DNA of 64,000 nt from assembly GCF_902459465.1 (NCBI RefSeq), contig NC_047062.1, forward strand, positions 24,118,001 through 24,182,000, read 5' to 3'. This DNA is from Asterias rubens. Its lineage: Eukaryota. Position numbers and translations under genes: made by a program. Shown here piece after piece: positions 3,053 through 31,999 of the stretch; position 1 is the first letter of the stretch; each line of letters begins with the position of its first letter. The notes below the pieces were generated by a model. It did not search any database. It was given only the letters and a program-made list of their open reading frames with translations, and had not been told where the DNA came from.

Positions 3053-3823
3053 GTAAAATAAAATCGGAACTAATGTAGGGGCTATACTCACTTGTTAATT
3101 GCTTCTCATGAATCTTAGTTTTGTTTAGATGTTTAAAAGTTTTGTTTAGATGTTTAATGTTTGCAAAGGTAGCCGTGTCACTCACAAACGATCTACGGTA
3201 TTTCATTATATAAGTTCGACTATTATATAAGTCCGGTCTCATGTAATCTGGGACGTCAGTCTACTTGATATCAGATAACTTCTTCGTCTATAAACCTCAA
3301 CACTCCTTTATCAACTTGTCTTTGTAGGTTTTTGTTCGTATTTTACTTTGTAGATCAGTGACTATATGTATTAGGCCTTTTGGTTTCATTCAAATACTTA
3401 TTTGCTTCTTAAATTTTACCATTTCAAACATTTCTCTTCGGGTTGAAATAAATTCCTGAAATGAAAGATGGTCACCATTATGAACATGCAGGACATGGGG
3501 CATTATTATTTGTTCACATTTCCCTCGTGTGTTTCTTTTGTAATCAGACGACAACGTTGGGGGGGGGGGGGGTTAGACCTTTATCACGATGCAGCCATCT
3601 TAATTTTCTCCCATTTATATCAATGTTACTAAACCGAGGCTGGAATAACAAACTGGTATGTTTACTAATTGCAGAGTGATTGTTAGCATTCATTATTGTT
3701 ATTCGATACCAATGACCAAGATGGAGGCAGCATGATAAAGGTTTAAAGCAGTTAAAAAAATAAGTTGCATACATTTAATTGCCAAGTTCCATGTACCTAA
3801 AATTGTGTATTTTTTTCCCAAAG

Positions 3824-4046
3824 CGAGGTGATGGAGATGGGCAAGGTAAAGTGAAGCAACTACCAGAGGAGAATCCTAGTAGCGACACGTACCAGTCTGA
3901 TATGAAGGTTGCACCTGCACAAAAGAGAGAGATCGATGCTCAAATTGAAGACAATAAGACGGGACGGAAAAGGAGAAAAGCCTTGGCTGATTTGTCTACC
4001 CGATGGCCCGGAGGTGTTGTCCCTTACGTCATTAATCTTGACTCAG
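3824..4046 (+). CDS. Astacin exon 2: pro-peptide, RKRR furin site, start of catalytic domain (KALADLSTRWPGGVVPYVI)
   Basis: Acceptor tttcccaaag; RWPxxVVPY astacin N-terminal motif; phase 0 to 1. Confidence 0.92.
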
Positions 4047-4613
4047 GTAAAAAGTCAACGTTGCTATTATTACACACTATAATCGGCATTAGTACATGCT
4101 TTTGTTGTGCTTTTTGTTTACTAATTTATTTGTATGTTGGGGTGAGTGATTTTTGTATTTCATTTTTTACATACCTACATTTGTGTATGTGATAACACAT
4201 TAAGCTCCTCTGTTTGGTAAGCCAATATTGATAGCCTATACGCCTGACATGCAATTTAGGTCCAGCATAGGAATAACCACCAGGAAATTAAGTCAACCCA
4301 TTAAGACGCTTTTTGTTCATGAACACTGCTACCCGGCTGATTCCGGCCGTTAATTTAACTACCTTATAAGTATAACATAATCATCTCACCGAGGAGTATT
4401 ATGGGAGCACATCCAATCACAAAAGCCATCACCCCTGCCTCTCACCCATTCTTCCCATGAGTGTCATGGCTGGGATTCGAGCCAACACCTAGATGACATT
4501 CATTTCGTATATAGCTTGATGAATGCATACTCCAAACACTCAATAGTTTATTGATGCACCATTTTATTTGATATATTGATATGTATATTTGTTTATTTAT
4601 TTTTTACTCCTAG

Positions 4614-4734
4614 TTGATAATTTAAAGGTTATTACGAGTGCATTTGACCTTTGGGAGGCCGAGACATGCATCAAGTTCGAGGCTTACGACGCAAGCAAAC
4701 ATGACGTCCACCTGGTGTTCAGAAAACTAGACGG
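4614..4734 (+). CDS. Astacin exon 3 (AFDLWEAETCIKF)
   Basis: Acceptor ctcctag; astacin WExxTCIxF motif; phase 1 to 2. Confidence 0.93.
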
Positions 4735-5070
4735 GTATACAAAGAAGTATTTTGTTTATTGTTGTGTTTTGGAAAACTTAGAAACTAACTCGCAGCGATC
4801 TGATAATTTCACAGAAGCTCCAGAAACAAACAAAAACGATGACTGTGTACTGGTTAATAATTGGGCTTTGTATGTTTTGGCTTTAGCGTGAAGTCACTTG
4901 TAAAGGATAAAATTGCCGTGTTAAAATAATAAAATAAAAAACGTAGAACGGGCCTAAAAGACATACCCCCCCCCTCCCTCATCAACAAACCTTAGATCAT
5001 TTTTCAAAACACATAATCTTAAGAAAGGAAGAAGGTGAAACTCAAATAAAGTACTAAACTTCTTTTTCAG

Positions 5071-27633: not shown

Positions 27634-28650
27634 ATAAGCAGAACCTCTTTACAGACTTGCTCTTTTAACGAGAGCCAACTGTATGTATTGCGGCATCATG
27701 TAGATAATCAAGTCCACAATGGTTGTGCAGGAGTGCTGTACTGCTCTCTGTCCGTGATCATTTGATGCCACCTGCAGTCATTGATAACATACATAATTAC
27801 CATGCCCTTAGTTTTGGATTGGTCTAGAGAGGGCTAATGGCAAACTGTGTGACCTACATAACACAATGTAAGCCTTGACTTTCACCTGTTATTTGCTGAT
27901 GATACACTGACTACAATCAGTGCAATGTCTGAATGCGCAGAATGTCTAAATAATAATAACAATAATAATAATAATAAGACTTGTAATGCGCACGTATCCA
28001 CCCTGCTGGGTGTTCAAGGCGCAGAAATTAAACTTTGAAGTCTTTTCTTTTAACAAAGGTTGAAATACACATCACTCTGAAATGGTTGACTTTGAACTGT
28101 ACGTGTAAACAGAAATGTACAAATGTAAACCCAACGTGTACATTGTACATGTACATGGGCGTACATTTACAACCACTCCCAACTAAAGCCTGAATTTATA
28201 ATTCCCATACACAAATCGGTAAATCCTTAAAAGATGGGTTTGATCTTTTTCTTTCTCTGGTTGAACTCATGTTTACATGTTCACATACATGTATTCGTGC
28301 CTAGATGCGTTATCCAAAAACACGTGTTTTGATCCTTTTCTGTCTCTATTTAGACTCATGCATTGTACATTTTTCTGATTGAACTCATACATTGTACATT
28401 CTTACATTGGTGCATGGAAGCGACAATCTTTCTCCTGTTGACTTTCTTCACCAATCCTTCTACAAGATGTAGACAGCTTTTGACAGCTTCTACATAATGT
28501 ACAGAGTCCCAGACTGACATCATATGGAGTCTTATCAGCTACACTCCTTCTGTGATGGACTCACTAGATGCTATCACAGGGTGCTTCTTAACACAGGGGC
28601 TCTAATGGGTTCATGTGTGTTTACCTAGGTTAGGGTTTCACTCTCTGTGA

Positions 28651-29388
28651 CTGAAACTCTTGAAGGGTTTTCATAGAGAGTCTGAAACTCTCAAAGGGTT
28701 TTCATAGAAAGTCTGAAACTCTTGAAGGGTTTTCATAGAGAGTCTGAAACTCTTGAAGGGTTTTCATAGAGAGTCTGAAACTCTTGAAGGGTTTTCATAG
28801 AGAGTCTGAAACTCTCAAAGGGTTTTCATAGAGAGTCTGAAACTCTTAAAGGGTTTTCATAGAGAGTCTGAAACTCTTAAAGGGTTTTCATAGAGAGTCT
28901 GAAACTCTTTAAGGGTTTTCATAGAGAGTCTGAAACTCTTAAAGGGTTTTCATAGAGAGTCTGAAACTCTTAAAGGGTTTTCATAGAGAGTCTGAAACTC
29001 TTAAAGGGTTTTCATAGAGAGTCTGAAACTCTTAAAGGGTTTTCATAGAGAGTCTGAAACTCTTAAAGGGTTTTCATAGAGAGTCTGAAACTCTTAAAGG
29101 GTTTTCATAGAGAGTCTGAAACTCTTAAAGGGTTTTCATAGAGAGTCTGAAACTCTTAAAGGGTTTTCATAGAGAGTCTGAAACTCTTAAAGGGTTTTCA
29201 TAGAGAGTCTGAAACTCTTAAAGGGTTTTCATAGAGAGTCTGAAACTCTTAAAGGGTTTTCATAGAGAGTCTGAAACTCTTAAAGGGTTTTCATAGAGAG
29301 TCTGAAACTCTTAAAGGGTTTTCATAGAGAGTCTGAAACTCTTAAAGGGTTTTCATAGAGAGTCTGAAACTCTTAAAGGGTTTTCATA
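28651..29388 (+). repeat. 31-bp minisatellite (CTGAAACTCTTAAAGGGTTTTCATAGAGAGT), about 24 copies
   Basis: Directly visible head-to-tail array without spacers. Confidence 0.97.
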
Positions 29389-29745
29389 CCTTTTGTTGAT
29401 CAAGTTTTTGACGTGGCATGAATCCCTACTCACGGCGAATGAAGATGTTTGACCTGTAGCAGTTTCAGCTTCCAAGTTTTTGAGAGAAACAAACAGTGAA
29501 AATCACAGAGCAATGTTTTCAGGAGAGTTGCATAAAATACGCAAAAATAGTTTTCGGATTGTGAGTCCGAGACAAAATTATTTTTGTGATATTGTTTTAC
29601 TCACTATTGAACAACTACCGGTACAGCACCTCAGCCAGTAATATTTTAGTGGATGCATTGTACTATTATTATCTTCAAACCGTGTGAGTCTAATGTTAAC
29701 CTGTGGACATTGTGATTTGTGTCATACAAAAAGTACCCAAACCCT
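29377..29745 (-). mobile_element. Kolobok-like MITE family C (TIRs AGGGTTTtcaTACcTTTTGT / AGGGTTTgggTACtTTTTGT)
   Basis: TTAA at the left end; the reverse complement of the right end matches the element start at 31176. Confidence 0.7.
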
Positions 29746-29805
29746 CAGAAAACTACAGGGTAGCAATATTGAATCGATCTATCCGGCCCTTATACCTATA
29801 CAAGA

Positions 29806-30030
29806 CAAGCAAGTACAGGTTCAGTATTTGCATTGAAGTCAGTGTCATTGTACGATTATACACTGTACACTCTGTAGACTACTGATACCAAAGGATCAAT
29901 TCAAGCAAGTACAGGTTCAGTATTTGCATTGAAGTCGGTGTCATTGTACGATTATACACTGTACACTCTGTAGACTATTGTACGATTATACACTGTACAC
30001 TCTGTAGACTACTGATACCAAAGGATCAAT
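29806..30030 (+). repeat. Tandem duplication of 95 bp; the second copy carries an extra internal 34-bp duplication
   Basis: 29806-29900 is repeated at 29902-30030. Confidence 0.9.
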
Positions 30031-30162
30031 GTATAATTGATTGCACTTGATCAGGTAATAGACAAGAAGTACACAAGAGGCTGTGTACTTAATATAAACA
30101 CATCAGAGGAACACTTCAATGCATAAAACATTGCAACCTTATACATTGACAGACACTGTTAA

Positions 30163-30535
30163 AGGCGCTGGATTGGTAAATACTCAAAATAATTATTAGC
30201 TTAAACCTTACTTGGTAATGAGTAATGGGGAGCTGTTGATAGTTTAAAACGTTGTGAGAAACGGCTCCGTCTGAAGTAACATTGTTTTTCGAGAAAGAAG
30301 TAATTTTCCACGAATTTGATTTCGAGACCTCAGAATTAGATTTTGAGGTCTCGTAATCAAGCATTCTGAAAGCACACAACTTCGTGTGACAAGGGCTTTT
30401 TTTCTTTCATTATTATCTTCAACTTCGACGACCAATTGGGCTCAGATTTTCACAGGCTTGTTATTTTATGCATATGTTGAGATACACCAAGTGAGAAGAC
30501 TGGTCTTTGGCAATTTCCAATAGTGTCCAGTGTCT
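30163..30535 (-). mobile_element. MITE family A copy (reverse orientation)
   Basis: TTAA on both sides; shares TTAA 30536-30539 with the next copy. Confidence 0.85.
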
Positions 30536-31175: not shown

Positions 31176-31999
31176 AGGGACTGGGTACTTTTTGTACAAA
31201 ACACAATGTCCACAGATTTACATTAAACTTACACAGATTGAAGATACTGATGGTAAAAAGCTTCCTTCGAAATAATATTACTTGCTTATTACTTTTCAAA
31301 GTTGTGTGCTTTCAGATGCTTGATTTCGGGACCTTAAAGTCACCTGGAAGTGGTATTTTTTCAAAATAAAGCTTTTGTCATTAATACGTGTTTTGATGAG
31401 TGGAATGTGAATAAACAGTTAACTAAGGTTTTAAAAAATCAGTTCTTATGTTATTTACAAATTTAAGAGTAGACCCCGACCCGAGAGGGCGCTGTTCGTG
31501 ACGTCAATCGAGGCAGACTTTGCCTGTAATGCGTGGAGTAAACACAATTGCAATGTTGAAATTTTGAAATGTACCAACTCACGACTTGGACTTACATGTA
31601 CTTTGCACGTGTGTTTACTATACGCATTGCAGGCAAAGTCTGCCTCGATTGACGTCACAAAAGGGGTAGGCGGAGTCAGCCCCCAAACAACTTTATATAT
31701 TTTTTAAACATATAAATCGTGACAAACAATTACTAGAAAAATTGTTTTATTGTTCGCAAGCATATTACTCTTATGTTTGAAAGAAAAAAATTATATTTCC
31801 AGGTGACTTTAAATTCTAAATCTGAGGTCTAAAAATCAAATTCGTGGAAAATTACTTCTTTCTCGAAAACTACGTTACTTCGGAGGCAGCCGTTTTTTCA
31901 CAATGTTTTATACTATCAACCTTTCCCCATTACTCGTTACTAAGTAAGGTTTTATGCTAATAATTATTTTGAGTAAATTACCAATAGTGTCCACTGCCT
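31176..31999 (+). mobile_element. Chimeric family C (left) / family A (right) element, interrupted by a family B insertion
   Basis: TTAA on both sides; C-type left end, switch to A sequence near 31298, A-type right TIR. Confidence 0.75.
31338..31808. mobile_element. Kolobok-like MITE family B (TIR AGTCACCTGGAA) with an internal palindrome of about 49-bp arms
   Basis: 12-bp TIRs; TTAA duplication at 31334 and 31809; arms at 31498-31546 and 31610-31658. Confidence 0.88.

What the first reader, a model, noticed from the sequence alone, without database searches (positions are those of the whole stretch)
28651..29745. Minisatellite made from a transposon end plus its TTAA target and flank
Seen: the 31-bp unit breaks down exactly into 15 nt of flank (GAGAGTCTGAAACTC), TTAA, and the first 12 nt (AGGGTTTTCATA) of the TIR of the family C element, which begins inside the last unit (29377). 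Variant units (TTGA, TCAA, TTTA) cluster at the distal end, while the units next to the element are uniform, so expansion is polarised. The far end of the element lacks TTAA. Inference: repeated abortive excision/repair or slippage at the transposon end generated the array, which now offers many fresh TTAA targets and pseudo-ends. This would be a direct record of TE-driven satellite birth.
Basis: partly seen in the sequence, partly recalled or inferred. Interest (0 to 1): 0.72.

Follow-up and report, generated by a model that had tools for sequence, protein, structure and literature searches.

The report
Minisatellite born at a transposon-flank junction
A 31-bp repeat array in this animal genome was built by copying the joint between a small old transposon and its insertion site, and at least twenty arrays of the same design elsewhere in the genome show that the ends of such transposons are hot spots for the birth of tandem repeats.

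Summary
At 28651-29388 there are 23.8 tandem copies of a 31-bp unit. Each unit is about 15 nt of host flank, then TTAA, then the first 12 nt of the left inverted repeat of the 369-bp MITE at 29377-29745.

The MITE belongs to an old family with about 4,900 candidate copies. Its ends read TTAA|AGGGTTTTGATACC...CCCAAACCCT|TTAA, which is the Kolobok/T2-MITE signature, not the piggyBac one.

The array came from this particular copy:
- All units carry the copy's rare C at TIR position 9.
- The flank+TTAA 19-mer occurs nowhere else in the 417.6-Mb assembly.
- Unit and junction contigs turn up in four independent public runs, so it is not an assembly artefact.

The locus is not a one-off. The same family has a second junction array (11 x 51 bp) and two 2-copy junction duplications. 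A second TTAA-MITE family has at least 18 arrays built from TTAA plus the TIR start, against 1 array for two internal control motifs (P about 1.6e-4).

Most of the arrays inspected are bounded by short direct repeats or microhomology. I read this as slippage or template switching at a hot-spot terminus. The family is old and the array is young, so repeated abortive excision is not supported, though it is not excluded. Polarity is seen in only 2 of 6 informative arrays.

The parts
28632..28663 (+). u0: a diverged 32-nt proto-unit at the distal edge of the array. It reads AGGGTTTCA, then C, TCTCT, GTGA, CTGAAACTC and TTGA. It matches the consensus unit at 23 of 32 columns, and its 5-nt centre is complemented (TCTCT against AGAGA).
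   Evidence: Read in register. The flank to its left (28380-28631) is single-copy in the genome.
28664..29376 (+). 23 tandem 31-bp units in the register AGGGTTTTCATA + GAGAGTCTGAAACTC + TTAA. TRF reports the array as 28651-29388. Units u9-u23 (28912-29376) are identical.
   Evidence: Cyclic 60/61-nt unit contigs are present in four public runs.
29373..29376 (+). TTAA target-site copy at the left end of the MITE. It is also the last TTAA of the array.
   Evidence: Family alignment with flanks.
29377..29745 (+). K2P distance to the consensus of 20 relatives is 0.156.
29377..29396 (+). Left terminal inverted repeat. Its first 12 nt (29377-29388) are the part repeated in every unit. Position 9 is C where the family has G.
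29726..29745 (+). Right terminal inverted repeat.
29744..29747 (+). Polymorphic right junction. The reference reads CTCA. The alternative haplotype reads TTAA (29744 C>T, 29746 C>A).
   Evidence: tables 3 and 8: X1 record 7 and X4 record 30 run into unique flank.

Best explanation
An old TTAA-specific MITE with Kolobok/T2-type ends inserted at a TTAA. Long afterwards, a 31-bp segment spanning its left junction was duplicated in tandem. That segment holds host flank, TTAA and the first 12 nt of the TIR.

The duplication arose by replication slippage, template switching or unequal sister-chromatid exchange between two short non-contiguous direct repeats. One repeat is the TIR start, AGGGTTTTCA. 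The other is a look-alike, AGGGTTTCA, 32 nt upstream in the flank; it is preserved as proto-unit u0.

Once two copies existed, ordinary out-of-register exchange expanded the array to 24 units. The latest expansion produced the block of 15 identical units next to the MITE.

The array has no evident function and is best read as a neutral tandem-repeat locus. It is one of at least 20 arrays of the same design in this genome, where the termini of TTAA-MITEs are hot spots for such births.

Shown:
- the origin of the unit from this junction;
- its uniqueness in the genome;
- the direct-repeat or partial-unit geometry;
- recurrence and enrichment at termini;
- the age gap between the MITE and the array.

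Inferred:
- the molecular process (slippage versus break repair);
- the cause of the hot spot. My guess is fork stalling at the base of the TIR hairpin, or at the TTAA-centred quasi-palindrome.
For: 1. Unit make-up and register.

2. All units and the MITE share C at TIR position 9. Nearly all other copies have G: the C variant was seen at 2 other places among the first 100 of 221 exact ends, and among the first 100 of 867 matches listed TTTTCATA occurs only in this array.

3. The 19-mer flank+TTAA has 22 hits, all in this array, and 0 in the reversed control. The left flank is single-copy.

4. The geometry fits the two published models of minisatellite birth, as summarised in PMC3389668. The array ends in an incomplete unit (the 12 nt that are the true TIR start) and begins with a look-alike repeat (u0).

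5. The same geometry appears at independent loci:
- C5:8090020, 11 x 51 bp, with ACTT microhomology;
- C4:1826088, 2 x 93 bp, bounded by AAACCCTTTAA and AATCCCTTGAA;
- second-family arrays with direct repeats AGTAAT, GATT, TTAAAGGC/TCAAAGAC and TTAAAGG/TATAAAA.

6. Terminal enrichment. At least 18 arrays contain the terminal motif (45,517 occurrences). Only 1 array contains either of two internal motifs (18,492 and 19,760 occurrences). Binomial P is about 1.6e-4.

7. Age gap. The copy is 14% from consensus, and the best pairwise identity in the family is 82% or lower. The array is 98% matched, with 465 bp of identical units.

8. The array is real. Unit contigs are present in 4 runs, and a 75-nt contig in X17 crosses the array-MITE junction with no difference.
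Against: - The spacer of u0 (CTCTCTGTGA) differs from that of the units (TAGAGAGT). A simple slip between u0 and the TIR does not give the present unit. An extra event is needed: a flip of the 5-nt loop of a small hairpin, or a templated filler (AGAGAGT is the reverse complement of ACTCTCT in u0).
- Generic slippage does not by itself explain why termini are about 15 times richer in arrays than interiors.
- It also does not explain why 3 of the 4 independent variant types in this array fall in the TTAA (P about 0.008).
- Predicted hairpins in single units are weak, with z-scores of -1 to -2.
- No orthologous empty or array-free site could be examined.
Confidence: 0.6

Rival explanations
1. Transposase-dependent birth and growth. 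A Kolobok-type transposase cuts repeatedly at the TTAA|AGGG end of an element that cannot be excised cleanly. Each break is then repaired by out-of-register synthesis-dependent annealing or by end joining with templated filler, adding units next to the element.
For: - Arrays are enriched at termini, at least 18 to 1.
- The uniform block lies next to the MITE here and at C5:8090020, where the proximal units also share the MITE's derived GGTA.
- Variation is concentrated in TTAA.
- The 7-nt AGAGAGT in the unit is the reverse complement of nearby flank, which looks like a templated insertion. A 22-nt filler sits between the two copies at C8:3994757.
- The right end of this copy is damaged in the reference haplotype.
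Against: - The family shows no sign of recent activity: 14% from consensus, and no pair above 82% among those scored. The proximal 15 units are nevertheless identical.
- Polarity is absent in L085, L087, L088 and L091.
- Direct-repeat and microhomology boundaries are equally expected from replication errors.
- No autonomous partner was sought or found.
Confidence: 0.27
2. Each unit is a 27-bp micro-transposon flanked by TTAA: a left arm AGGGTTTTCATA, a loop, and a right arm TCTGAAACTCT that imitates the inverted TIR. The array grew by local hopping of this micro-element into neighbouring TTAAs, which adds exactly 31 bp in phase.
For: - The 'flank' part resembles the reverse complement of the TIR start. 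In the best register, 3 of 951 TTAA-adjacent controls score as well.
- In the second family, true TIR-TIR micro-units in tandem do exist: L089 (27 bp) and L092 (50 bp).
Against: - The resemblance is not significant in the other register, and it is post hoc.
- No TTAA-AGGGTTT-N(4-34)-AAACCCT-TTAA micro-element exists anywhere in the genome.
- The unit occurs at no other locus.
- All units have one orientation.
- In L089 and L092 the units are duplicated tail-to-head junctions of two full MITEs, which is not the case here.
Confidence: 0.05
3. A satellite existed first and the MITE later inserted into one of its TTAAs, or the array is an assembly artefact.
For: Every unit offers a TTAA target.
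Against: - Every unit carries 12 nt identical to the MITE's own end, including its private C9. An insertion would not create that.
- The unit is absent elsewhere in the genome.
- Unit and junction contigs appear in independent runs.
Confidence: 0.02

Closest known systems
Xstir tandem repeats carried by the Xmix T2-MITE (Kolobok superfamily) of Xenopus, as described in PMC6004289 citing Hikosaka et al. 2000 and 2004
   Same: A TTAA-specific MITE with an AGG... terminus is linked to tandem arrays derived from MITE sequence. Some arrays of the second family here share one unit at several loci (the 59-bp unit at C8:10096044 and C12:1372201), as Xstir does.
   Different: Xstir is described as an amplified internal segment that rides with the element. 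The window array lies outside the canonical end, contains the TTAA and unique host flank, and exists at one locus only.
Minisatellite birth between short non-contiguous direct repeats (Haber and Louis 1998; Taylor and Breden 2000), applied to TE-derived repeats by Jurka and Gentles and by Ahmed and Liang (PMC3389668)
   Same: The array is bounded by a short direct repeat and ends in an incomplete unit. Direct repeats or microhomology of 2-11 nt bound most of the arrays inspected.
   Different: Here one of the two repeats is the terminus of a DNA transposon, and the unit spans TE, target-site duplication and host DNA. The TE-derived repeats surveyed in PMC3389668 are not described there as spanning a TE-flank joint.
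Satellite seeds from double insertion of TEs at one target site (McGurk and Barbash 2018, as summarised in PMC9659126)
   Same: Target-site-sized junctions between tandem TE ends. L089 and L092 are duplicated tail-to-head MITE-MITE junctions sharing one TTAA. Four such junctions exist for family C.
   Different: In that model the repeat unit is the whole element. Here it is 31 bp of junction.
Duplication mediated by TIR transposons through transposition-independent gap filling and replication fork switching (PMC8277862)
   Same: TIR elements act as sites of template switching or gap repair that duplicate host sequence.
   Different: That work concerns host fragments captured inside elements (Pack-TIRs), not tandem arrays at the terminus.

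Membership tests
Kolobok / T2-type TTAA-specific MITE | TTAA target-site duplication on both sides | tested here: met
   The 20-copy alignment with flanks shows TTAA at most intact ends. TTAA+TIR 16-mers: 867 in the genome against 4 in the reversed control. The window copy has TTAA at the left end, and at the right end only in the alternative haplotype.
Kolobok / T2-type TTAA-specific MITE | Terminal 5'-AG (AGGRR motif in T2-MITEs; RR terminus in Kolobok), per PMC6004289 | tested here: inconclusive
   The ends read AGGGT...ACCCT. AG and AGGR are met, but the fifth base is T, not a purine.
Kolobok / T2-type TTAA-specific MITE | An autonomous partner encoding a Kolobok transposase with the same ends | not tested
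   No search for a transposase was made.
piggyBac-type MITE | TTAA target plus 5'-CCC...GGG-3' termini (from established knowledge of piggyBac) | tested here: not met
   TTAA is met, but the termini are AGGG...CCCT.
MITE (general) | Short, non-coding, with terminal inverted repeats and a high copy number | tested here: met
   Length is 369-390 bp. The 20-nt TIRs are 80% complementary. There are 3,695-4,896 candidate copies.
Minisatellite / VNTR | Tandem array of 10-100-bp units | tested here: met
   31 bp x 23.8 copies.
Minisatellite / VNTR | Copy number varies among individuals | not testable with these tools
Slippage-born minisatellite (Haber-Louis / Taylor-Breden geometry) | The array is flanked by a short direct repeat, and its terminal unit is incomplete | tested here: met
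   The 12-nt partial unit at 29377-29388 is the true TIR start. The look-alike AGGGTTTCA opens u0 at 28632. Caveat: the spacer of u0 differs from that of the units.
TE double-insertion tandem (McGurk-Barbash) | The repeat unit is the whole element plus one target-site duplication | tested here: not met
   The unit is 31 bp, and only one full MITE is present.

The most novel reading that the evidence does not exclude
The ends of Kolobok-type TTAA transposons are actively converted into tandem arrays by a process tied to the transposition machinery: cleavage at TTAA|AGG followed by slipped or templated repair. Under this reading, terminal-junction arrays are a regular by-product of this superfamily and a previously unrecognised, enzyme-driven route to minisatellite and satellite birth. 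The window array, which carries host flank, would be an in-situ fossil of that process.
Probability: 0.25. Interest if true: 0.75.

Novelty: new variant of a known kind. Interest (0 to 1): 0.5.

Why it matters
How minisatellites start is hard to study, because the founding duplication is usually erased. Here the unit is a chimera of host flank, target-site TTAA and a dated transposon end. That fixes three things: the source sequence is known, the event is later than the insertion, and the birth was local.

The same design recurs at 20 or more loci in one genome, with a measurable excess at MITE termini over MITE interiors. This gives natural replicates for asking whether inverted-repeat elements seed tandem repeats through replication stalling or through transposase-made breaks.

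It also matters for annotation. Such arrays multiply TTAA sites and pseudo-ends, and they can sit in genes. The scan noted a 41-bp example that quadruplicates a splice donor.

Tried and rejected
1. Flank as a disguised inverted TIR, or unit as a micro-palindrome. An anchored alignment against 951 TTAA-adjacent controls gave 3/951 in one register and 62/951 in the other. This is weak and post hoc. No TIR-only micro-elements exist in the genome.

2. Hairpin-driven instability of the unit. DNA folds gave -2.9 to -7.9 kcal/mol, with z-scores of -0.6 to -2.0. This is not convincing.

3. Paralogous empty site. The left flank is single-copy, so no paralogue can show the pre-insertion state.

4. Chance-rate estimate. 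TRF on 162 kb of this genome found about one array of 5 or more copies per 54 kb. From that crude rate, a few junction-spanning arrays among thousands of ends would not be surprising. I therefore replaced the argument with the terminal-versus-internal motif control, which does show enrichment.

5. Length polymorphism. All runs found were Logan contigs. Following the tool's own advice, I laid 29025-29900. That shows presence and junctions, but not allele length.

6. Polarity as a general rule. It was rejected after reading ten more arrays.

7. My first tandem-TIR search (gap 36 or less) wrongly suggested that the locus was unique. Its single odd hit led to the second array.

8. Two-copy hits of the second family were not counted as duplications. 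Several are nested insertions into a native internal TTAA.

Full report
**What is there**

TRF reports one array at 28651-29388: period 31, 23.8 copies, 98% matches. It is the only large minisatellite in the window.

Read in the register that starts with AGGG, the locus is laid out as follows:
- unique DNA up to 28631;
- a diverged 32-nt proto-unit, u0, at 28632-28663;
- 23 units of 31 bp at 28664-29376;
- the element, from 29377.

Variants are TCAA (u1, u5), TTGA (u0, u2-u4), TTTA (u8) and one G>A in u2. Units u9-u23 are identical.

**The element**

The stretch 29377-29745 matches thousands of places in the window's own assembly, which is 417.6 Mb in 150 contigs. There were 3,695 candidates, and the best were 71-75% identical.

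I aligned 20 copies with 45 nt of flank on each side. Homology starts at AGGGTTTTGATACCTTTTGT and ends at GTACCCAAACCCT, with TTAA outside both ends and no further conservation in the flanks.
- TTAA plus 14 nt of the left end occurs 221 times, against 0 in the reversed control.
- TTAA plus 12 nt of either end occurs 867 times, against 4 in the control.
- The element is about 380 bp, with 20-nt TIRs.

A TTAA target with a 5'-AG(G) terminus is the signature given for Xenopus T2-MITEs and the Kolobok superfamily in PMC6004289. piggyBac termini (CCC...GGG, from general knowledge) do not fit. No transposase partner was sought.

The window holds one full copy and a 3' fragment at 31176-31286 on the minus strand, which also ends CCCT-TTAA.

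**The array came from this copy's junction**

Three results show this:
- All 24 TIR starts in the locus read TTTTCATA, where the family reads TTTTGATA. The C variant is rare elsewhere.
- The 19-mer of flank plus TTAA has 22 hits with 1 or fewer mismatches in the whole genome, all in this array. A two-to-four-unit query finds only this locus.
- The 283 nt to the left are single-copy.

So the MITE did not land in an older satellite, and the unit is not a dispersed repeat.

**The array is real**

I laid 29025-29900 on runs carrying four different organism labels.
- Cyclic unit contigs of 60-61 nt are present in all four runs.
- In X17, a 75-nt contig crosses 29359-29433 without a difference.
- Length variation cannot be read from contigs.
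- Contigs that continue into unique right flank show a second haplotype, with 29744 C>T and 29746 C>A. There the junction reads AAACC-TTAA-GAAAAC. The missing far-end TTAA is therefore a decayed target-site duplication, not evidence of an odd insertion.

**Age**

The copy differs from the consensus of its 20 relatives at 14% of sites (K2P 0.156). The relatives differ at 7-14%. Even the most consensus-like copy has no partner above 82% among those scored. The array, by contrast, includes 465 bp of identical units. Expansion, or at least homogenisation, is therefore much younger than the insertion and younger than any visible activity of the family.

**Recurrence in the same family**

My first search for tandem TIR starts allowed a gap of 36 nt or less and seemed to show a unique locus. 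Its one odd hit proved to be a second array, at C5:8090020-8090590 (TRF gives 12.1 copies). It has 11 units of 51 bp.
- Each unit is 35 nt of flank, then TTAA, then the first 12 nt of the TIR, and a full MITE follows.
- The unit boundary carries ACTT microhomology.
- The distal edge is in flank phase.
- The four proximal units share the MITE's derived GGTA, while distal units keep the consensus GATA.

Wider gaps (30-120 nt) added two 2-copy cases:
- C4:1826088 is a 93-bp duplication of right end, TTAA and 82 nt of flank. It is bounded by AAACCCTTTAA and a flank look-alike, AATCCCTTGAA.
- C8:3994757 is a 74-bp duplication with 22 nt of filler.

**Recurrence in another family, with a control**

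A second TTAA-MITE family has ends reading TTAA|AGGCAGTGGACAC, and it has copies in the window at about 30160-30500 and at 56935-57285. It shows the same thing on a larger scale.

| Motif | Occurrences | Tandem pairs, gap 10-40 | Tandem pairs, gap 41-70 | Arrays of 3+ units |
|---|---|---|---|---|
| Terminal TTAAAGGCRSTGG | 45,517 | 111 | 146 | at least 18 |
| Internal GAGTAATGGGGAG | 18,492 | 8 | 3 | 1 |
| Internal TTTTCGAGAAAGA | 19,760 | 4 | 6 | 0 |

- The terminal arrays include at least 17 distinct unit types.
- I counted them from the listed matches, so 18 is a lower bound.
- The single internal-motif array itself contains TTAAAGGCAGT in its unit.
- For 18 of 19 arrays at an exposure share of 0.543, binomial P is about 1.6e-4.
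- Two-copy terminal hits were left out, because some are nested insertions into a native internal TTAA.

Ten of these arrays were fetched and read in register. Six are built as unique flank, then repeated units of TTAA, the first 15-36 nt of TIR and 1-19 nt of flank, then a last TTAA and the MITE. Boundaries show:
- direct repeats of 4-8 nt (AGTAAT, GATT, TTAAAGGC/TCAAAGAC, TTAAAGG/TATAAAA);
- short microhomology;
- in two cases (L089, L092), the unit is a duplicated tail-to-head junction of two MITEs.

**Mechanism**

The geometry is that of the two established models of minisatellite birth, as summarised in PMC3389668: a segment flanked by short direct repeats, and an array that ends in an incomplete unit.

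In the window, the two repeats are the TIR start and u0's AGGGTTTCA. An in-phase 9-of-10 match of this kind is not rare across thousands of copies, but it is very unlikely by chance at this one phase. So u0 is either the seeding repeat or the oldest unit. Its 28% difference from the consensus unit is about twice the MITE's 14%, which fits an origin near the time of insertion.

One step is not explained. The spacer of u0 (CTCTCTGTGA) differs from that of the units (TAGAGAGT) by a complemented 5-nt centre. That could be a flipped hairpin loop or a templated filler; AGAGAGT is the reverse complement of ACTCTCT in u0.

The terminal excess needs a cause beyond generic slippage. I see two candidates:
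- Fork stalling at the base of the TIR hairpin, or at the TTAA-centred quasi-palindrome. This would be independent of the transposase. Single-unit folds give it little support.
- Breaks made by a transposase at TTAA|AGG and repaired out of register.

I favour the first because of the age gap and because polarity is not general. The window array and C5:8090020 are polar, but L085, L087, L088 and L091 are not. The second is not excluded. In its favour, 3 of the 4 independent variant types in the window array fall in the 4-nt TTAA (P about 0.008).

**Comparison and novelty**

Satellites and minisatellites derived from TEs and MITEs are well known (review PMC9659126). They include Xstir/Xmix in a TTAA-specific Kolobok-type MITE (PMC6004289).

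What differs here is that the unit straddles the insertion junction, so it contains target-site TTAA and unique host DNA. That proves in-situ birth at the terminus. The design also recurs, with a measurable terminal excess. Five literature searches found no description of such junction arrays. That is a limited search, not proof of absence. I rate it a new variant of a known kind, of moderate interest.

**Limits**

- Counts come from exact-pattern searches of one assembly.
- Arrays were counted by eye from truncated lists.
- No related species, no long reads and no transposase were examined.

Noticed in passing
window 28664-29376: Three of the four independent variant types in the array hit the TTAA tetranucleotide. 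TCAA and TTGA are the same T>C change on opposite strands of the palindrome. P is about 0.008 if variants fell evenly over the 31 nt.
   Followed up: partly
window 56851-57366: A MITE of the second TTAA family (56935-57285) is flanked on both sides by the same stretch of about 81 bp, which begins and ends with TTAA. I read the sequence and the duplication is there, differing by one inserted base. Its origin was not studied.
   Followed up: partly
window 29797-30011: Just right of the MITE there is a duplicated block of about 96 bp and an exact 34-bp x 2 tandem (29943-30011). Contigs from other runs carry insertions of 6 or 13 nt after 29797. This small region holds several independent tandem duplications.
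   Followed up: no
L026:2257-2829 (G000:C3, about 370 bp from a family C copy): A 22-bp x 26 array whose unit contains CAAACCCT, the last 8 nt of the family C right end, but no TTAA. Whether it is related is unknown.
   Followed up: no
G000:C8:10096044, C12:1372201, C5:5701435; also C5:12078803, C4:18039683, C6:5730590: Arrays or pairs with nearly the same 59-bp or 62-bp unit (TTAA plus the first 55 nt or so of one end of the second MITE family) occur on different chromosomes. Some terminal arrays are therefore multi-locus, as if carried along by transposition, like Xstir in Xenopus.
   Followed up: partly
L089:664-771 and L092:616-773: Two MITEs sit tail-to-head sharing one TTAA, and the junction (right-end nt + TTAA + left-end nt) is tandemly repeated 3-4 times. 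These are palindromic units of 27 and 50 bp.
   Followed up: partly
L090:703-864 (G000:C3:731102): A 41-bp x 4 array that opens with TTAA+AGGCAGTGGAC and contains GGTAAGT, with no full MITE after it. It is probably the locus of the scan note on a quadruplicated splice donor (s1-151008). The gene context was not checked.
   Followed up: no
window 31176-31286 (minus strand): A 3' fragment of family C, up to 88% identical to other copies, ending CCCT-TTAA.
   Followed up: partly
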